Part shown: piece after piece, positions 19-48,881 of the stretch
How positions within the stretch are numbered: the stretch's first letter is position 1
How the letters are laid out: every line of letters begins with the position of its first letter
Assembly: GCA_038087875.1 (NCBI GenBank)
Contig: CM075980.1
Coordinates: 22,134,001 to 22,198,000 of the forward strand
Direction of reading: 5' to 3'
From: Malacoraja senta
Taxonomy: Eukaryota
Length of the DNA: 64,000 bases
Made by a program: the position numbers and the translations under genes
The notes under the pieces: generated by a model
Told to the model about the DNA's origin: nothing
Database searches by the model: none
Seen by the model: the letters and a program-made list of their open reading frames with translations, nothing else

Positions 19-247
19 TTAAAAGGTCTCATCATCATTGCAGTTGTTTGTCCAATGCCCAAATACCTCACAGGTGTCACAATAGGGGCGTTCATCTTTT
101 CTACTGCCATGGTAAGTAGAATGTGGTGGAAAGTCAGACACCTGAGCTTGTGTGGGGCAATCCTCAGTGTCATGGATGTCAAAGCAATCACATATGTCAC
201 AGAAGAGTCGTGGAGGTGGCTTCTTCTTTGTTTGTGTCTCATCCAAG
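19..247 (-). CDS. CLIP1: CLIP1 last coding exon: two CCHC zinc knuckles and C-terminal ETF motif
   Basis: Translates to [30 protein letters not shown]...[22 protein letters not shown], matching the CLIP-170 C-terminus. Acceptor cttttcag at 249-248, phase 2; TAA at 21-19. Confidence 0.97.
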
Positions 248-853
248 CTGAAAAGAAGACATTTAGCTGATTAATCTCAGTAGTCCTTAATTCTTCAGAA
301 AAGAAACCAGATTTCTCTGCCGCACACATGAAGGTGGAAACGGAACAAGGAAAAATATTTTGGTTTTGATAAACATGGTACATGGTACCGTTTTCTGCTG
401 CTACATATTGTCGTGCAGTTAAGGGCCTGTCCCACGGGCAGGCGACTCCATGCGGCAAGCGCTACCTAACCGGAAGCGGGGGCCGCGTGGAGGTCACGGG
501 GTTGGTCCCACGTAGATCGCCGGAACCGTATGGAGTTGGTCCCGACACCGCGCGGGGCTCCGAAAAACTGACACTGTTCAAAAATTCCGCGCAGCAACGG
601 CCTACCGCCCCGCTGTCGCATCGAGGCTGCGCGCACCGCCTCGACGCCGCGTGCACCGCCTCCGTCAACTCTGGAATTGTTGTGAAGGAAGGAACTGCAG
701 ATGCCCATTTACACCGAAGATGGACACAACAAAAATGCTGGAGTAACTCAGTAGATCAGGCAGCTTCTGTGGACAGGTGGTGTTTCGGGTCGAGTCACCT
801 TCTTCGGACTAAAGTCTTCTGCAGTCTTCTATGGTCTGAGGAAGGGTCTCGAC

Positions 854-40509: not shown

Positions 40510-40647
40510 CTCATTTTCAAGCTTCTGGTTCTTTAATTTGGACTCTTCCAATTCTGCCAAACTTTTATCCTTCTGTTCGTCCAATATATTTTTCTCCTTC
40601 ATAACCTTCTCTAACGACTGCTCAGCCTCTTCAGCTTTTCTCGAAGC
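40510..40647 (-). CDS. CLIP1: CLIP1 exon (138 nt)
   Basis: ASRKAEEAEQSLEKVMKEK...LEESKLKNQKLENE. Acceptor ttttag, donor gtaacg, phase 0-0. Confidence 0.9.
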
Positions 40648-42294
40648 CTAAAAAATAAAATTATCTTGTGTGAATGGTGTTTAAAGTTTTAACGAAACGT
40701 GTTATACAAAAATCCCTAAAATGAATTTAAACCCACCTTTCACGTGGATGGCGCAAATTAATTAAGGTTATGCAGATAAATTTAGAAAAATAGATGGTTG
40801 AAAGTTTTCATGCAAAATTAAGTAATTTAACCATTTCTGTGAAATTATGCTTTCACATTCCATATGATCACATTGAATGTTAGTCTCCATTGCTGTTATT
40901 AAACACTTAAAATTCTGCAGAAGCTCTGTACCGTTAAATAATTAGATTTCTAACGTGCTAGATCCAGCTTCATGCCAAACATGCCACTGATTCTTGTTGA
41001 ATTACAATAATTTACGTGGGGGTAACCATAAGATTCACAGACATGAAAAACTGCCAACAAGCCAACTCATCTTGTGAAATAAAAACATTAACTGTATAAT
41101 ATTAGATTAATTTGGACATTTTAAAATTCAAAGTATAATTTAACATTTTATAGATACATTTACATATTTTAATGCATTAAACCCCTCATCTGCCAGGTTC
41201 CTTCAGAACCACATGGACTCGTGCTCGATAACATGCCGAATGACCCTGGCACCAGTCTGGTGTCTTATCAAATAGTCAATCTTCAGTTAGGAACTGTGAT
41301 GCCAAACTGTGATGCCATCAATCGAACCATAAGCACAAGAACTCACATCTGCCCATAACCTGCTGTGTACATTCTCACAACTACATTCAAAATTAACCAA
41401 AAGTCATTGAATAGGAGTTATAAGCGAGAAGGGAATAATAATCATCTATTCTTTTACTTCCAATCTATGATTGGAACAGCTTGCTGTTGTGAAGCATCTT
41501 AGGAAATATTTAACAGAGTAAAGAAATTTCAAGTCACTACATTGAGGTATAGCAGTTCTTGTGAATAATATCGAGACATTGGTACTCCGTAAATAGATTT
41601 AAAAATTTTGTTCTCTATTCCTGAGCTAAATAAGATGCTATTCATACCCTGGCCATGATTTGCAAACTTTAAAGTTTATTATCAAACCTCCAAGTTCCGA
41701 ACACCAAGTGCAATGCAAGCACTCGTGCGATTGTTTAAATATTTCCACCCAATAATTTCAAATTGTTTCTGCTTTACTTGATGTTAGGCTGTTGGCAGTA
41801 AACTATGGTTTCTCTGTGGATAAGTATGAAGTATTAAGATTTTTTAAATAACTGCACTATATAAAACATAAAATTGTAACACTGAGAAAGAAATTTGAAG
41901 ATAATTATATGTTAAATTTGGAGAAATGTAAAATAGTCCCACCAATAAACTAAAATAGGAATAAAATTGGATTAAAGCACTACTTTGACATATCAATTAA
42001 ACTTAAACATCCAATTTATCCACACGCTTCATTAACTTTTCGGCACGTAATGTTGATTATGGCAAAATGAGAAGCGTTTTTTTTAAAGATGAATAGAATT
42101 ATGTGCAAAATCCCACACCAATTATTGTAGAGACAAGCCACAAAAATCATTTCCCAGAATTAATATATTCTAAAGTAGTTATTGTTATAACGGTGATTTT
42201 AAAAGATACAACACCAAACCTGTTATTGCACTCATTAGTAAAAAAAATGTGCCCATAACTTTCTGAATTTTATCTAAATGCTTATAATTGGTAC

Positions 42295-44568
42295 CTCGAT
42301 CTTCTCTGATAAAGTAATATTCTGATGAACCTGGAGATCTTTTAATTTGGAAGCAAGTTTCTCTTCATGTTTCAGCAATTCTTCCTTGTCACACATTAGC
42401 TGCTGCAGGGTTGCTTCAATTTCTCCATTGTCTTGAGCAGAAAGAGCAGCTTCTTTCTGTAACTTGCAGAGGGACTCTGTTAGCTCGCCATTCTCCTTCA
42501 CTAGCTCTTCTTTTTCTGTCTGAAGTTTTAGCACTGTTGCCAGCAAATTATCATTTTCTCCCTGCAGCTTCACTTGATCCACGTCAGAAATCTCCTGACA
42601 ACTGCGAAGTCCGTCCAAGAATTTCAAAAGATTTGATTCTGAAGCCTGGAGCTCTACTTTTTCTTTGCTCAATGTATCAACCTTCTTCTTCAGCTCTTCA
42701 ATGGTGGACATTAGGTAATTCTTCTCAGCTACTTGATCTTCCTTCTCACCAGCAAACTTCTTTTGTTCAGCCTGAAATCTCTCTTTTTCTTTTATTAACA
42801 CATTATTTTCTGAAAGCAATTCGTCATGCTTAGCTTTAAGAACACCCATTTCATTTGTCAATACGTAGACATTATTTTCAAGTTCTGCATGAGCCTCATT
42901 CAGAGCCTCTTTTTCCATTTTTGCTGCATCTCTTTCTTGTATCAGTTGGTTCTCAAGTACTCTCACTTGTTCATTCAGTACATTGTCCTTTTCCTCTAAT
43001 TTCACCCTCTGCCAAGTAAGATGCTCCTTTTCAGAGGACTGTGCCTCAAGTTCAGCTACCAGCTTTTCCTTTTCTTGTAACAAGGAATGTCTCTCTAAAT
43101 CCACAATATTTTTGCTCTTCTGAATTTCATCCAAATATGTGGTGAGTCTTGAATTTGAGGCTTGGAGTTCTTCATTTACTTTGGCGGACTCGTCAAGCTT
43201 TTGCGTTAAAAGCTCAACGTTGTCGAAGAGCTGATCTTTTTCTGTAACTGTGTATTCAATTTCAGAGATGAGTTGCTGTTGGCTCAATTTAAATTCGACT
43301 ATCTCACCCGAGAGAGATTCATTTTCTGCCGTTTGCATGTTGCTTTTTGATTCCAAGGTTGCCTTCTCCTTTTGTAACAAGTCACATTGGGTTTCTAGCT
43401 GCGACTGCTTCAGCCAAAGCAAATCTTTCTCAGATTTCAGGGCATCTCTCTCTTCATTTAGCTGCTTTGCCTCCTCAATGGATTTCTGCAGCTTTGCAGT
43501 CAGTTCCATCTTTTCCTTAGCTAGTTCATCCCTTTCTACAGTTAGTTGTCTCAGAGATGTTGTTAGCTCTTCCTTCTCCTGGAGCAGTTGAACACGTTCA
43601 GAATCTGTTACCTCCCTGCTATTCTTAATCTCATCCAAGAGTTTTGACTGGCTAGATTTTGAAGCCTGGAGCTCTGCATTTTCCTTCATGTATTTTTCCA
43701 GCTCATTCTTCAATTGATCATGACTACTCTGCAGCTGATCTTTTGAGATAATGAAAGATTTCTTTTCAAGGATAGTCTTCTGCAAACTTGAACTAAGATC
43801 ATCTTTTTCTTTTGTAAGAGTTTCATTTTTAGATATCACCTCATCATGTGCCGATTTCAGCAGAATTTTCTCCTTTGTTAAAGTTTCATATTGTGCTTCA
43901 AGCTTTGAGCATTTCAATAGAGTAGAATCTTTTTCCACTATCAGCACATCTCTTTCTTTCACCAGCTTTTCCAGAGCAACTGATGTTTCTTCATGAAACT
44001 TGTGAAAATTTTCGCTAATTCTGTCTTTTTCTTTTGCAAGTTCCTCTCTTTCTGCAATCATTTCCCCGTGGGCCGATAACAACTCCTCCTTTTTATGACG
44101 CAGCTGGGCTAGTTCACTTTCAGCAGCTTTGCTTTTTATCTGAATATTGTCTAGCTGTTTACTCAGGTCCGACTGCGAGGCTTGGCGATCCTCATTTTCT
44201 TTGGTTAACTTTTCCAGGAGCTGCTGCAAATGTTTGGCTTCTAAGGAAAGGTCATCTTTTTCAGTGACCAAAGCGTCCTTTTCCAGACAAAGTTGTTGCT
44301 GAGTACCCTCGAGATCCTGCCTCTCTTTTAAAAGTGCTGTTCTTTCCAACTGGAGATCCTCATTCTTTGATTCTAACACTTGCTGCTCTGTCTGCAGGGA
44401 GGTACACTGTAACTTCACTTCTGAAAGTTCAGAAAATAAGGACTCTTTCTCGGATTTTAGTGCACCGTTTTGCTGGATCATCTGTTCTTTATCTCCCTTC
44501 AAAGCTCTCACATCCTCTGCTATTTGCTCATACTGAGATTTGGCTGATGCTAGCTCACTGGTTAAAGA
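42295..44568 (-). CDS. CLIP1: CLIP1 giant cassette exon (2274 nt, 758 aa repetitive coiled coil)
   Basis: Uninterrupted E/K/L/Q-rich frame. Acceptor AG at 44570-44569 follows a long pyrimidine tract, with an in-frame TAA just upstream. Donor GAG|gtacca. Phase 0-0, between two exons that are adjacent in canonical CLIP-170. Confidence 0.85.
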
Positions 44569-45699
44569 CTTCAGAATTTAAGTGGGGGGAGGGAAAAAAA
44601 GGCAAAAACAAAACATAGTCAAGCAGACAAATGGAAACAGCATGGATTAAAGACAATACAAAGGAAAAGCGTGCTGCTCAAACTTAAAAAAAGAAAAACA
44701 TAGAGCAGTGTTTGGATTTCTCAGCAGACTTGAGGAATATTAAATCATAATTAATCATAAATCAATATTAAAAATGCATAACTAAAAGGTCTACCAAACC
44801 TTTCCTAAGCAACTCAGACCATAAACTGTTAAATAACTAAGTAAAATGTTGTCATTTCGAATAAAATAGTTAAAGATGCAGGACATCAAATGAATGACCA
44901 AACTTTGGAACATAGAACAGTACAGCATGGGAACAGGCCCTTCGGCCCTCAATGTCTGTGCCAGACATGGTAGCACCCAAAATTAGTGGCTTCAGTTGTC
45001 AGGTGTAAACGCAAACTCTGTTCCTTATTTTCAGTTGGAAGCAATTTATGCTCATCCACGACTATCAGAAAAGCAGGCAGGTAATTTATTGTGAGAGAAG
45101 GGTTGCCAAAATGGTGACGCAAGAATGATAGTGTCATCATGAAACTGAAAAGAATGCATTATAATTATGTTAATTATGTCAATGGGGAAAAGGGGGGTTT
45201 GAGGCGAGGGAGTTTCAGATTTGCAATAACAAAGTTATTTTTCCCCCTGCAGGAGTTTCCAAATAAATTGGTCTTTATAATGATTAGAGATTTATTTTTG
45301 TTACTACAAGCTGAAAATACCAAAGACTATGTTACATTGCCTAATAGAGTCATATTGCACCAGTGTCAAATAGAAACAATAGTTTGTAACTGGATGAATA
45401 TAGCAGCTGTGTTCTGAGGGGACAATATTTCTGATTTCTGCAGCGATATGTTTTGTCTCTGAAGAATGTGGAGAAAGGATGTTTTGGGTTGGGACCCTTC
45501 TTCAGATGTTCTACCTGATCCACTGAATACCCCAGCATTTTGTATCTTTTTTTTGTAAACCAGGGTCTGCAGTTCCTTATATTAAACTTTATTATCAATT
45601 AGGCTTGCATAATACAAATAATGTTCCCTAATTCATCGATCGTGTTATTGACGTTTGCAATTTGCATAGCTGAACAACCTGTACTGTGTTTTAAGGTCA

Positions 45700-46230
45700 T
45701 AAGTTATAGTAGAATTATGCCATTTGGACCATCAAGTCCACTCTGCCATTTAATCATGGCTGATCTATTTCTCCCTCCTAACCCCATTCTCCTGCCATCT
45801 CCCCATGACCCCTGACACCCATACTAATCAAGAATCTATCTATTCCTGCCTTAAAAAAATCCATTGATGGCCTTCACAGTCTTCTGTGGCAAAGATTTCC
45901 ACCAATTCATACCCTCTGACTTTCCTCCTCATCTCCTTCCCAAAGGAACATCCTTTAATTCTGAGGCTATGACCTCTCGTCCTAGACTCTCCCACCTGTG
46001 GAAACATCCTCTCCACATCCACTCTATCCAAGCCTTTCACTATTCGGTATGTTTCAATGAGGCCCCCCCTCATTCATCTAAACTCCAGCGAGTACAGGCC
46101 CAGGGCGATCAAACGTTCATCATATGTTAACTCACTCATTCCTGGGATCATTCTTGTAAACCTCCTCTGGACTCTCCCCAGGGCCAGCACATCCTTCCTC
46201 AGATATGGTGCCAAACATTGCTCACAATTT
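45700..46230 (-). mobile_element. CR1 LINE 3' fragment
   Basis: PYLRKDVLALGRVQRRFTRMIPG...LGLYSLEFR / MRGGLIETY...ESRTRGHSL. Confidence 0.85.
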
Positions 46231-47475
46231 TCTCTATTAGAAGCAATTAACAAGATGTTGGCTCCAACAGATATACCTTGCAAATCACAGTAATATATTC
46301 AGATTTGCCACTATTTAGTGGGGTACTGCAGCCATGCTACTGAACAATACATTCTTAGAAAAAATAATAAAAAAACACTTATTTGCATTTATTGCTAGTA
46401 GTTTCATCAGGGAGGAGAGTTGTTGGGGACAGTCACCTTTGAGTTTTTAATCAACAAAAACAAAACAAATTTTAAAAAAATGGGTACAATAACAGACTAA
46501 ACACAGCATCAGGCTAAAATATGAATAAACGTTTTGATGCATTGATGCTTTCAAATGCTTACAGCTAATCTAATTTTGTGTCTAACATGAAAATGCCATT
46601 AGAAAGTACAATAATTCTATAAAAGTATGTGCTTCTGATAAATCATCTGAGAATCCCAAACACTTTATCGTTGTGCCAATTGACAGTTTTTCTTGTTTTC
46701 TGCAAGAGCATAGTAAACACTGAGGATTATTATAAAATGATGAATGGAAAATGAAAGTAAGAAATAAAACCACAGGATACAGATGAACAGCCAACCAAAA
46801 AGGACTGGCTGTTACAATACAAACTATTGCTGTTACAAATGAAAGTTTACTAAACATAAGCGCTAACATTAGCATATTAAACAAAATAAAAAAGTAGCTA
46901 ACATATTTACTATAAAAATGTAAATGTTTACTACTTTTCCTAACCCAAATGCAAATGCATAATTTGTGAAAGGCAAAGCAGAGTTGATCAAAGATATTTA
47001 TTATCTGTGCTTTTGGCAACTTATTGTAATCCTCCAAAATTGTCAACTCTCAAGCAGCGCGAGCACTAACTCACACAATTACAATATTTAAATAGGAAAT
47101 GTCTATGACTTGCGTACGATACAAGACTTTCTTTGACACTAGTAACCTGTTGCTGCGTAGAAGGTGCAATTGAAATTGCCCCAAAAATCCAAATGTGGAA
47201 TATAGAAATTATTCTACATGATACCATTGAAATGTTTAATGTAAAAATATATAATTCCACAAGTACACTATCAATGGACAGTACAAAATTTAAACACGGG
47301 TGGTTTTTTCTCTCCAATAAAGAACCCATCAAATCTTGGATGCAGACAAAAAGATAATTCATTGCACCACATCAATCTTGAATGGATCGTCTGCATAATT
47401 TCTTTGATTCCAAATAAAGTGGCTTCAAAAATAGAGTACCTCTGAACTACTTAAATATAAAAACTGCAGGAATAC

Positions 47476-47691
47476 CTGGACCTGTTCCATTTGCTTCTGT
47501 AGTTCTTCTACAAGTTTTTCTCTTTGATTACTTTTCTCTTGAGAGATCTTCAGTGCTTCTTTGGTTTCCTGCAACCTTGTCTTGAGGTCCTTCACTAAAG
47601 TATCACGGTTTACATTTATTTCTGAAACTACTTTCTCATGGTTGCTTTGCAGTTCCTTAGTGTGTGCACTGTGCATTTCCAGCTGCTGCTG
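47476..47691 (-). CDS. CLIP1: CLIP1 exon (216 nt; tandem CAG acceptors)
   Basis: QQQLEMHSAHTKELQSNHEK...LVEELQKQMEQVQ. Acceptor ccacag, donor gtattc, phase 0-0. Confidence 0.88.
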
Positions 47692-47895
47692 CTGTGGGAA
47701 TCAACAAACAAATAAAGTCAGTTTTGTAACTTTCACCCTCATAAAAATATCAAAATCCTCACCTTTTCCAAGTCATCCAAAATAACATGTCCAGATAAGT
47801 AAAGGAACTTTATTATTTTAAATGTTTAAAAAAAAACAGTTGAGAAGGGAAATTTAAGCATAAAACTATGATTTAAAACTACTGGCAAATACGGT

Positions 47896-48881
47896 ATATA
47901 TATATATATATATATATAATACGAAAACTCTCATCTTGTTTGTTTGTATGCGTGCATGCGTGTGCGTGAGTTCCTGAAACTCCGCCAAAACGGTACACGA
48001 TAGCCCTACCCTTACTCACCATTGCCCTGGCTTGTGTAGTACCAAGTTTCGTTCAGATTGATGTTATATTTTACAAGTTATTGACATTTTAAACTTAAAA
48101 TAACTTAAAACAGCGACCCCACTTGCCGGCCACGCCTGCGCAGTTGGGGGAGGCCAGTCAGCCCCGCGAGTGCGCAGTGGGCCTGGTATCCGCGCTGTGG
48201 TGGGTCCGGGGGCGGGGAGAGTACAACTTCATCGCCGACGTGGTGGACAAAACGGGGCCAGCGGTGGTTTACATCGAGATCCTGGGGAGGTGAGGAGGGT
48301 GAGTGGGGAGATTGAGGCAGAGGAGGGGGTAGGGAGGAGAGGAAGGGGAAAGTGGGGGAGGTGAGGAGGGAGAGTGGGGGAGGAGGGGGGGTAGAGAGGG
48401 GGTAGTGGGGGAGATAGGGAGTGGGGGATAGAGGGAGAGGGCAGTGGGGGAGGTGAGGAGGGAGAGTGGGGTGGTGTGGGATAGGGGGAGGTGATGAGTG
48501 GGGAGGAGGGGGGTAGAGGGAGAGGAGGGGAGATGGGAGGGGAGGGGTTATGGAGGGAGGGAGTGACTGAGGGTAGGGGAAAGGAGAGGCAGAGGTGAGG
48601 GAGGGAGTGGGGGAGGGGAGGCGGAGAGAGAAAAGAGGGAGGGTGAAGAGGAGGGGGGAAGTGCTGGGGATGAGGGGGAATGGAGGAGGATAGCAGTAGG
48701 AAGAGGAATAGCGAGGTAATGGAGGTGGGGAGGGGGAAGATATGTTCACATTGATCTTATTTTTTACATTGCCATTTTAAACTTTAAAAATGTCTGCCGT
48801 GCCTGTGCAGTTGGGGGCTATGGGTGAGTGGTGGAATATTGCATTGGGGGAGCGGGGCCCAACGGGTCCCACTTGATCTAG
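47896..48881 (+). mobile_element. Non-autonomous Helitron-like element with internal G/A-rich tract
   Basis: 3' hairpin GGGGCCC-aac-GGGTCCC at 48854-48870, then 7 nt and CTAG|T. The 5' end is blurred in a (TA)n run followed by tgtt/tgcg microsatellite. No TSD seen. Confidence 0.65.
48283..48740. repeat. G/A-rich low-complexity tract
   Basis: About 450 bp of almost C-free ggggaggtgaggagggagagtgggg-like units. Confidence 0.95.

What the first reader, a model, noticed from the sequence alone, without database searches (positions are those of the whole stretch)
42295..44568. Giant skippable CLIP1 exon made of a hierarchical coiled-coil repeat (~170 aa x4 = 340 aa x2)
Seen: a 758-codon, stop-free, phase 0-0 exon between two exons that join directly in canonical ~1400-aa CLIP-170. 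A QASxSxxxxxLD motif recurs at residues 110, 282, 450 and 622 of the 745-aa ORF, with spacings of 172, 168 and 172 (24 heptads, or 24 plus a 4-residue stutter). Alternate units are closer relatives. ALKSEK...QC..LQ.E...LESK occurs at residues 17 and 357, and LKxxHDE at 218 and 558. In DNA, gaagcctggagctct (42641, 43661) and gaggcttgg (43157, 44177) each lie exactly 1020 bp apart. This implies two rounds of ancient duplication. Inference: inclusion adds about 110 nm of rod (about 0.15 nm per residue), nearly doubling the distance between the CAP-Gly head and the zinc-knuckle tail. That would be a splice-controlled length switch affecting head-to-tail autoinhibition and dynactin/LIS1 reach. The AAG acceptor, ~100-nt AG-free zone and weak donor (gtacca) fit a regulated exon. 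Long predicted CLIP1 isoforms in other vertebrates may contain a homologue, so the exon itself may already be annotated.
Basis: partly seen in the sequence, partly recalled or inferred. Interest (0 to 1): 0.85.

Follow-up and report, generated by a model that had tools for sequence, protein, structure and literature searches.

The report
Known giant CLIP1 cassette exon, fish orthologue
This is a real 2,274-base alternatively spliced exon that adds about 758 residues of coiled coil to the microtubule linker CLIP1, but the same exon is already published for human and mouse and is annotated in many vertebrates.

Summary
Window 42295-44568 (minus strand) is a stop-free, phase 0-0 exon of 758 codons. 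It lies in a gene that is colinear with annotated CLIP1 and ends in the CLIP1 zinc knuckles.

RNA contigs from related species (about 3% diverged) splice it precisely to both neighbouring exons. Two of the five runs also carry the skip junction, so it is a true cassette exon.

The exon holds four homologous units of about 172 residues. Unit-versus-unit hhalign E-values are 1e-9 to 2e-17, while units against the canonical rod give at most 15% probability. In a tree the units group by position across species, so the array predates the split of this non-tetrapod lineage from tetrapods. The proposed 2x340 hierarchy is not resolved.

The exon is not new. Ilik et al. (Nature 2024, PMC10901741) describe the CLIP1/Clip1 giant cassette exon (human, 2,268 nt) as spermatid-specific and repressed by SAFB in somatic cells. 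RefSeq long isoforms carry it in mouse, chicken, a snake, axolotl and bichir.

Possibly new details:
- the 4x172 repeat;
- length conserved at 735-786 residues although identity falls to about 35%;
- conserved residues that are mainly heptad a/d leucines.

The length-switch mechanism remains untested inference.

The parts
42295..44568 (-). Giant CLIP1 cassette exon: 2274 nt, 758 codons, phase 0-0, 38.3% A and 61.6% purine on the coding strand, no proline codon
   Evidence: Translation. RNA contig covering 42294-44568 with 0 gaps. Composition. End-to-end alignment to the exon region of annotated CLIP1 long isoforms.
44569..44675 (-). Acceptor region: AAG|T acceptor, polypyrimidine tract, 105-nt AG-free zone with branch-point-like TTGAC (-51) and TTAAT (-79)
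   Evidence: The joint 44568<->47476 has CT..AC ends on the plus strand, which is GT..AG on the minus strand, in four runs.
42287..42294 (-). Weak donor GAG|GTACCAAT, which departs from the GTRAGT consensus at +4 to +6
   Evidence: Joint 42294<->40646/7 in four runs.
47476..47692 (-). Upstream constitutive CLIP1 exon; its 5' boundary is +/-1 nt at a CAGCAGCAG acceptor. It joins either the giant exon or the downstream exon.
   Evidence: RNA contig pieces 47476-47692. tblastn to P0001 residues 907-980.
40510..40647 (-). Downstream constitutive exon, 138 nt. It is joined to 42295 when the giant exon is included and to 47476 when it is skipped.
   Evidence: Joint and loose ends: the 28 letters behind 40649 in X2 and X10 are the same as those behind 44570, so they are the end of the upstream exon.
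44035..44550 (-). Repeat unit U1 (exon residues 7-178)
43531..44034 (-). Repeat unit U2 (residues 179-346, 168 aa). It holds the first +4 heptad stutter (about residues 200-210) and the best conserved block (residues 301-360).
43015..43530 (-). Repeat unit U3 (residues 347-518). It lacks 4 residues near its start that tetrapod orthologues have.
42499..43014 (-). Repeat unit U4 (residues 519-690). It holds the second +4 stutter (about residues 545-553).
42295..42498 (-). C-terminal 68 residues of the exon, outside the four full units
22..249 (-). Last coding exon, with the CLIP1 zinc knuckles; it identifies the gene.
   Evidence: Pfam PF16641, E = 1.7e-17. 80% identity to the axolotl CLIP1 C-terminus.

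Best explanation
The stretch is the orthologue, in a non-tetrapod jawed vertebrate, of the already described giant protein-coding cassette exon of CLIP1 (CLIP-170).

Shown here: it is a single 2,274-nt in-frame exon. In RNA of closely related species it is either spliced between the two neighbouring rod exons or skipped. It encodes 758 proline-free, heptad-periodic, mostly helical residues built from four ancient units of about 172 residues.

Inferred: inclusion inserts up to about 94-113 nm of extra dimeric coiled coil into the C-terminal third of the CLIP1 rod, between the CAP-Gly heads and the zinc-knuckle tail. Selection appears to act mainly on the insert being a coiled coil of a set length, not on its exact sequence.

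Taken from the literature for human and mouse, and only inferred here: inclusion is kept low in somatic cells because SAFB proteins bind long A/purine-rich exons and outcompete SR proteins. Inclusion is released in late spermatids, where CLIP-170 works at the manchette. The weak donor, the distant branch point and the 38% A content of this exon fit that mode of control.
For: Gene identity. tblastn of axolotl and chinchilla CLIP1 long isoforms gives colinear minus-strand exons from 58622 to 22. The last exon hits the CLIP1 zinc-knuckle family.

Orthology.
- The exon aligns end to end with residues 968-1738 of axolotl X8 and 1043-1804 of chinchilla X5, at 34-37% identity and E = 1e-59 to 1e-76. 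It lies between the same flanking exons and starts with the same SLT/SLS residues.
- The paper's mouse 'Clip1 giant exon' primers translate to LADTED (residue 974) and SEELRG (residue 1023) of mouse isoform X9. They therefore span the junction into this exon region.
- The human exon is listed as 2268 nt, against 2274 nt here.

Transcription and alternative use.
- Joint 47476>44568 is seen in X1, X2, X9 and X11. Joint 42295>40647 is seen in X2, X9, X10 and X11.
- Unique intron sequence has depth about 0.
- One 2332-nt contig spans the whole exon with 77 substitutions and 0 gaps.
- Skip-junction contigs occur in X2 (depth 59 against 13 for inclusion) and X10 (8.8 against 7.0).

Coiled coil.
- The exon has 0 Pro and 37% charged residues. 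The heptad register is stable, with two +4 stutters.
- 47 of 53 invariant or near-invariant leucines sit at a/d positions.
- AlphaFold2 gives helices 3-230, 326-471 and 500-754.

Repeat.

Length constraint. Inferred exon length is 735-786 aa across mammals, birds, axolotl and this species, while identity falls to about 35%.

Regulation in mammals. SAFB binding, de-repression on knock-down, spermatid specificity and A bias above 33% are reported in PMC10901741. This exon is 38.3% A.
Against: - Tissue and cell type of the RNA runs are hidden, so spermatid specificity is not shown for this lineage. In three of the five runs only the inclusion form was assembled. That would be unusual for a strictly spermatid-specific exon unless those runs are from testis.
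- All RNA evidence comes from related species, not from the window's own organism, and from assembler contigs. Contigs show presence, not absence or true ratios.
- A-richness does not set this exon apart. The neighbouring constitutive rod exons are equally A-rich (39-43% A), so composition follows from coding a coiled coil.
- The AlphaFold2 monomer model leaves residues 231-325 and 472-499 non-helical at pLDDT below 50. The rod may therefore be segmented rather than continuous.
- A partial count of substitutions against one related species gives pN/pS of about 0.66 (14 synonymous, 36 non-synonymous; 50 of the 77 differences). That is weak residue-level constraint and is not clearly different from neutral.
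Confidence: 0.85

Rival explanations
1. One reading: inclusion is a length switch. It roughly doubles the head-to-tail distance, and so changes CLIP-170 fold-back autoinhibition and the reach of the tail for dynactin and LIS1.
For: The exon lies inside the rod, between the heads and the zinc knuckles. Both isoforms coexist. Length is conserved. From established knowledge, not tested here: CLIP-170 folds back so that the CAP-Gly heads bind the zinc-knuckle tail, and the tail binds p150Glued and LIS1.
Against: No data here or in the cited paper bear on autoinhibition. The insert is in the C-terminal third of the rod, so the fold-back arms would become very unequal. The model shows possible hinges inside the exon that could let the long form still fold. 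The gain is about 76% of a roughly 1000-residue rod, not a doubling.
Confidence: 0.25
2. The exon matters for specific binding sites rather than for length. Conserved blocks would dock spermatid-specific partners, and the rest would be filler.
For: Conservation is uneven. Residues 1-60 and 301-360 show 0.70-0.76 agreement among four lineage consensuses, against a mean of 0.61. The block LL(D/E)EIK.SR..TDSE..QLL.EKE is near-invariant from this species to mammals.
Against: The contrast is modest. Most invariant residues are core leucines and charged residues typical of any coiled coil. Length conservation within about 3% is not explained by two short sites.
Confidence: 0.3
3. The 2x340 pattern reflects a recent, lineage-specific duplication or gene conversion of a double unit, rather than an ancient four-unit array.
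For: The offset-340 signal is much stronger here (30% identity) than the 344 offset in tetrapods (16-22%). U2-U4 share identical codons at 60% of identical residues, against 40% expected from codon usage. Exact 15-nt and 9-nt matches lie 1020 bp apart.
Against: Units group by position across species: U1 98/96, U3 99/96, U4 90/91 support. Each window unit is closest to its positional counterpart in axolotl and chinchilla. U1-U3 codon identity is at the chance level (0.45). Within-species unit identity is high for all pairs, as expected of a slowly evolving lineage.
Confidence: 0.08
4. Artefact: the RNA signal is genomic DNA or retained intron, and the open frame is chance.
For: The runs are only labelled 'RNA?' and are assembler contigs.
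Against: Depth is 0 over unique intron sequence on both sides. There are exact GT..AG joints in five runs from at least three organisms. The frame is open for 758 codons, with 0 indels at 3.4% divergence. The exon is conserved from fish to mammals.
Confidence: 0.01

Closest known systems
CLIP1/Clip1 giant cassette exon of human and mouse (Ilik et al., Nature 2024, PMC10901741)
   Same: Same gene and same intron position. Same length (2268 nt in human, 2286 nt inferred in mouse X9, 2274 nt here). Same A/purine-rich composition. An in-frame cassette, with end-to-end protein alignment.
   Different: Only about 34% protein identity. Tissue specificity and SAFB dependence are unknown in this lineage. 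Inclusion looks like the main assembled form in three of five related-species runs. As far as I could read, the paper does not describe the internal 4x172-residue repeat or conservation beyond mouse.
RefSeq predicted long CLIP1 isoforms (2050-2220 aa) of mouse, guinea pig, rabbit, dog, bats, chicken, passerines, eagles, the snake Candoia, axolotl, the frog Pseudophryne and Polypterus
   Same: They contain the homologous exon at the same place in the rod, flanked by CAP-Gly domains and zinc knuckles.
   Different: These are computational models without functional study. The frog and Polypterus versions are longer (2250-2370 aa) and were not dissected here.
Other giant cassette exons of cytoskeletal linkers: ninein (NIN) large exon, ANK2/ANK3, MAP2, MAP4
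   Same: Coding exons longer than 1 kb that are skipped or included by tissue. They are A/purine-rich and are listed together with CLIP1 as SAFB targets. The ninein exon also encodes coiled coil and is switched during neuronal differentiation (PMC6429586).
   Different: Unrelated sequences. Most encode disordered or projection domains rather than a regular repeat-built coiled coil.

Membership tests
CLIP1 (CLIP-170) gene | Two C-terminal CCHC zinc knuckles (Pfam CLIP1_ZNF) | tested here: met
   Window 22-249 (-) hits PF16641 at E = 1.7e-17 with 2 stretches.
CLIP1 (CLIP-170) gene | Long central coiled-coil rod colinear with annotated CLIP1 | tested here: met
   tblastn of P0001 and P0062 gives ordered minus-strand exons from 58622 to 22.
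CLIP1 (CLIP-170) gene | Two N-terminal CAP-Gly domains | not testable with these tools
   The window starts at about residue 458 of the orthologues, so the CAP-Gly exons lie outside it. The orthologous long isoforms do have them.
Orthologue of the published CLIP1 giant exon | Same position between the same flanking exons, with an end-to-end alignment | tested here: met
   The exon start SL(T/S)..L.S is conserved.
Orthologue of the published CLIP1 giant exon | The published exon is the one carried by the RefSeq long isoforms | tested here: met
   The paper's mouse primers encode LADTED (residue 974) and SEELRG (residue 1023) of mouse X9. The human primers encode CIQLLH, within the conserved U2 block. 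The human exon is 2268 nt.
Giant protein-coding cassette exons under SAFB control (Ilik et al. 2024) | Coding exon longer than 1 kb that is both included and skipped in frame | tested here: met
   Inclusion joints and skip junction in RNA contigs of related species. Phase 0-0.
Giant protein-coding cassette exons under SAFB control (Ilik et al. 2024) | Adenosine bias above 33% and purine-rich GAAGAA-type motifs | tested here: met
   38.3% A, 61.6% purine, and 7.9 GAAGAA-type hexamers per kb against 1.4 for the window. The flanking short rod exons are equally A-rich, so this feature does not discriminate.
Giant protein-coding cassette exons under SAFB control (Ilik et al. 2024) | Bound by SAFB proteins and de-repressed on SAFB depletion | not testable with these tools
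   Shown for human and mouse only.
Giant protein-coding cassette exons under SAFB control (Ilik et al. 2024) | Inclusion restricted to late spermatids | not testable with these tools
   Run metadata are coded, and the word filter takes no tissue terms.
Two-stranded alpha-helical coiled coil | Heptad periodicity with hydrophobic a/d positions and no helix breakers | tested here: met
   Stable register with two +4 stutters, and 0 Pro. 47 of 53 conserved Leu are at a/d positions.
Two-stranded alpha-helical coiled coil | Continuous helix over the whole exon | tested here: inconclusive
   In the AlphaFold2 monomer model (pLDDT 70, pTM 0.22), 627 of 758 residues are helical. Residues 231-325 and 472-499 are non-helical at low confidence. 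No dimer model could be run.

The most novel reading that the evidence does not exclude
The giant CLIP1 exon is a molecular ruler. It is an array of four 172-residue coiled-coil modules fixed before the divergence of this fish lineage from tetrapods. Its length (735-786 residues, about 110 nm) has been held within a few percent while the sequence drifted to about 35% identity. On this reading it sets a defined spacing between microtubule-bound heads and tail-bound cargo or structures, for example in the spermatid manchette. Its inclusion would also be broader than spermatids in non-mammalian vertebrates.
Probability: 0.25. Interest if true: 0.55.

Novelty: already known. Interest (0 to 1): 0.3.

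Why it matters
The exon nearly doubles the size of a much-studied microtubule plus-end linker, yet almost all work on CLIP-170 uses the short form.

This report adds three things to the published mammalian exon:
- It goes back at least to the common ancestor of this non-tetrapod lineage and tetrapods.
- It is built from four ancient 172-residue units.
- It keeps its length while losing its sequence.

Together these give a concrete hypothesis, length as the selected property. It can be tested by exon deletion or by length-matched replacement in mouse. For the scan itself, the result is mainly that an apparently striking finding is an orthologue of a known, annotated exon.

Tried and rejected
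- Pfam scan of the exon gave only sub-threshold coiled-coil noise (HALZ, APG6_N, and others).
- A word-indexed homologue search with the exon alone found 4 hits, because its length filter excludes full-length isoforms. The exhaustive representative search and region searches seeded with long isoforms were needed.
- Six literature searches on CLIP-170 isoforms, long isoforms and large exons found nothing relevant. The seventh, using the term 'giant exon', found the Nature 2024 paper.
- Akhmanova et al. 2005 (PMC1257404) is not held. I could not check whether a larger testis protein was seen there.
- The 2x340 hierarchy was tested in five ways: unit identities, a maximum-likelihood tree of 24 units, profile-profile scores, heptad-preserving shuffles and codon identity at identical residues. 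None shows alternate units as sister pairs. Only U2-U4 codon identity is mildly raised.
- No relation of the units to the canonical CLIP1 rod was detected (hhalign probability at most 15%).
I left that row out and ran 18 rows.
- No fold search was run, because matches to a long helix are uninformative.
- The organism was not identified. The unit tree places it outside axolotl plus amniotes. From memory only, the intronic LINE-like ORF resembles repeats common in cartilaginous fishes.
Full report

Yes, in every particular.

- Window 42295-44568 on the minus strand reads as 758 codons without a stop. The mechanical ORF list gives the 745-aa ORF at 42274-44511.
- The intron ends ...ccccccacttaaattctgaag and the exon starts TCT. 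The exon ends ATCGAG and is followed by gtaccaat.
- The nearest upstream AG is 105 nt from the acceptor. The last 60 intron bases are 77% pyrimidine.
- The upstream exon ends ...GTC CAG at 47476, followed by gtattc. The downstream exon begins GCT at 40647 after ttttttag and ends at 40510. Both inclusion and skipping therefore keep the frame.
QASxSxxxxxLD lies at 110/282/450/622, ALKSEK at 17/357, LKxxHDE at 218/558 and QC..LQ.E...LESK at 35/375.
- The two DNA words lie exactly 1020 bp apart, as stated.

**2. Is the repeat more than coiled-coil noise?**

Yes.

- Ungapped self-comparison peaks at offset 340, with 30.4% identity and z = 20 against shuffles.
- Cutting the exon at the QAS anchors gives four units of 172, 168, 172 and 172 residues plus a 68-residue tail. 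The units align over about 165 columns at 29-40% identity.
- I shuffled each unit so that every residue stayed in its own heptad position. All six unit pairs still exceeded all 300 shuffles, with z = 7-13.
- I built profiles from six orthologues per unit. Unit-versus-unit hhalign gave 96-99% probability and E = 1e-9 to 2e-17, in register. The same units against 172-residue windows of the canonical CLIP1 rod gave at most 15% probability.
- The units are therefore true homologues of each other. They are not detectably derived from the neighbouring rod.

**3. Is the 2x340 hierarchy supported?**

It is not resolved.

- Identities do not nest. U1-U3 is 32% and U2-U4 is 31%, but U2-U3 is 40%. HH scores do not nest either.
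- A maximum-likelihood tree of 24 units (window, axolotl, chinchilla, bat and two mammalian transcript ORFs) groups units by position. Support is 98/96 for U1, 99/96 for U3 and 90/91 for U4. The deep branches between unit types have 52/49 support.
- The four-unit array therefore already existed in the common ancestor of these species.
- Within each unit clade the window branches outside axolotl plus mammals. This makes the source a non-tetrapod vertebrate (inference).
- Every orthologue shows the same two top self-offsets, 172 and about 340-344.
- Tetrapods have four extra residues at the U2/U3 boundary, and the window has a gap there. Their super-period is 344 = 2 x 172, and the window's is 340.
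- At identical residues, codon identity is at the level expected from codon usage (0.40) for five pairs. It is raised only for U2-U4 (0.60, 31 of 52). This is a weak hint of local gene conversion, not evidence for a recent duplication.

**4. What kind of protein segment is it?**

- Composition: 758 residues with no proline. Glu, Leu, Lys, Gln and Ser dominate, and 37% of residues are charged.
- A simple a/d scoring finds one register over residues 15-198, a second over 210-541 and a third over 554-745. Each shift is +4, which is a stutter. All four QAS anchors fall in the same heptad position.
- I aligned 19 orthologous exon regions (this species, axolotl, nine mammals, eight birds). Of the 53 invariant or near-invariant leucines, 47 are at a/d positions.
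- Conservation is somewhat higher over residues 1-60 and 301-360.
- An AlphaFold2 monomer model built from 18 rows has mean pLDDT 70 and pTM 0.22. It gives helices 3-230, 326-471 and 500-754. Residues 231-325 and 472-499 are left non-helical at pLDDT below 50.
- Monomer models of dimeric coiled coils often break arbitrarily. This result neither confirms nor excludes hinges.
- At 0.1485 nm per residue (established value), 758 residues give 113 nm, and the 627 modelled helical residues give 93 nm.

**5. Which gene is it, and is the exon transcribed?**

- tblastn of two annotated long CLIP1 isoforms gives colinear minus-strand exons from 58622 down to 22. The last exon carries the CLIP1 zinc knuckles.
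- Sequencing runs labelled RNA hold 20-39% of the exon's 31-mers, which is the share expected at about 3% divergence. They come from at least three organisms other than the one that holds 100%.
- Contigs laid on the window show the joint 44568<->47476 in X1, X2, X9 and X11. Its ends are CT..AC on the plus strand, which is GT..AG on the gene strand.
- Depth is zero over unique intron sequence. One 2332-nt contig covers 42294-44568 with 77 substitutions and no gap.
- The second laying shows the joint 42294<->40646/7 in X2, X9, X10 and X11.
- In X2 and X10 a short contig runs from the downstream exon into 28 letters. These letters are identical to those that follow the giant exon's acceptor, so they are the end of the upstream exon. 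This is the skip junction.
- Contig depths are 59 (skip) against 13 (inclusion) in X2, and 8.8 against 7.0 in X10. In X1, X9 and X11 only inclusion contigs were assembled.
- Contigs show presence, not absence, and the tissues are unknown.
- Of the 50 listed substitutions in X2, 14 are synonymous, 36 are not, and none makes a stop. The crude pN/pS is 0.66. Residue-level constraint is weak, but the frame is kept, with zero indels.

**6. Is it known?**

Yes.

- The exhaustive protein search found axolotl CLIP1 isoform X8 (2113 aa), with the exon at residues 968-1738, and Pseudophryne X7.
- Region searches seeded with long isoforms found the exon in RefSeq models of mouse (X9, 2126 aa), Mus caroli, Mastomys, guinea pig, squirrel, rabbit, pika, dingo, hyena, fur seal, two bats, a tamarin protein, chicken (X8, 2183 aa), pheasant, eagles, many passerines, the snake Candoia and Polypterus.
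- Ilik et al. (Nature 2024, PMC10901741) name a class of 'giant protein-coding cassette exons' bound and repressed by SAFB proteins, and they list CLIP1. They state that the giant version is expressed during spermiogenesis. They describe a spermatid-specific giant exon of mouse Clip1 that is spliced in after SAFB knock-down in 3T3 cells and suppressed by SAFB1 overexpression in N2A cells.
- Their Supplementary Table 1 gives the human exon as 2268 nt.
- Their mouse primers translate to peptides at residues 974 and 1023 of mouse isoform X9. These straddle the junction into the region that aligns with the window exon.
- The window exon shares the signature they stress: 38.3% A, 61.6% purine and many GAAGAA-type hexamers. 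The flanking short rod exons are equally A-rich, so this follows from coding E/K/Q-rich coiled coil.

**7. What is left that may be new?**

- The 4 x 172-residue architecture and its age.
- The conservation of exon length. It is 762 aa in most mammals examined, 756-758 in lagomorphs and human, 735-768 in birds, about 771-786 in axolotl and 758 here. Over the same range, identity falls to about 35%.
- Inclusion as an abundant form in some RNA samples of this fish clade.
- The upstream 100 residues of the rod are about as divergent as the exon, while the downstream 100 are better conserved. Fast divergence is therefore not special to the exon.

**8. Mechanism**

- Shown: the exon is an in-frame cassette that encodes a long, heptad-periodic, mostly helical insert in the C-terminal third of the rod.
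- From the literature, for mammals only: repression by SAFB in soma and inclusion in late spermatids.
- Inferred: the insert acts chiefly as a spacer of set length between the CAP-Gly heads and the zinc-knuckle tail.
- The main rival is that the conserved blocks are partner-binding sites.

**9. Verdict**

It is an orthologue of a published and widely annotated exon. Its interest is modest and rests on the repeat architecture and the length conservation.

Noticed in passing
window 44900-46290: The intron upstream of the giant exon holds a LINE-like repeat with reverse-transcriptase-tail-like ORFs (45840-46073 and 46074-46283, minus strand). RNA contig depth over it runs to the thousands and up to about 146,000 in all four runs, with many rearranged joints. 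It is therefore a very abundant, transcribed repeat family.
   Followed up: no
window 48105-48749: A GC-richer stretch (45% GC, GC skew +0.24) inside an intron. It has a 214-aa Pro/Ser/Leu-rich ORF on the minus strand and looks like low-complexity CT/GA-rich sequence rather than an exon.
   Followed up: no
window 43489-43668 and 44389-44568 (exon residues 301-360 and 1-60): These are the two best conserved blocks of the exon across fish, amphibian, bird and mammal. The first contains LL(D/E)EIK.SR..TDSE..QLL.EKE. They are candidate partner-binding sites.
   Followed up: partly
window 42499-43014 versus 43531-44034 (units U4 and U2): At identical residues, U2 and U4 use the identical codon in 31 of 52 cases (0.60), against 0.40 expected from codon usage and 0.35-0.46 in the other unit pairs. 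This includes the exact 15-mer over ELQAS and may reflect local gene conversion.
   Followed up: partly
window 47683-47700: The acceptor of the upstream exon is ...cccacagCAGCAGCAGCTG, a run of tandem CAG that could allow NAGNAG-type alternative acceptors. RNA contigs align to 47692.
   Followed up: no
P0004, P0065, P0132 (proteins): Frog (Pseudophryne, 2250 aa) and Polypterus (2370 aa, partial) CLIP1 models are longer than the others and give several overlapping alignments to the exon, so they may carry extra units. A 3110-aa Hyla sarda model named 'lava lamp' combines CAP-Gly, the CLIP1 zinc knuckle and a Sec1 domain, which probably makes it a fused gene model.
   Followed up: no
P0058: A mammalian transcript ORF from a public assembly reads from the giant exon straight through the donor into non-homologous sequence (...FTVK then GEVQLRAPDS...). 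This suggests intron retention or an alternative end after the giant exon in that sample.
   Followed up: no
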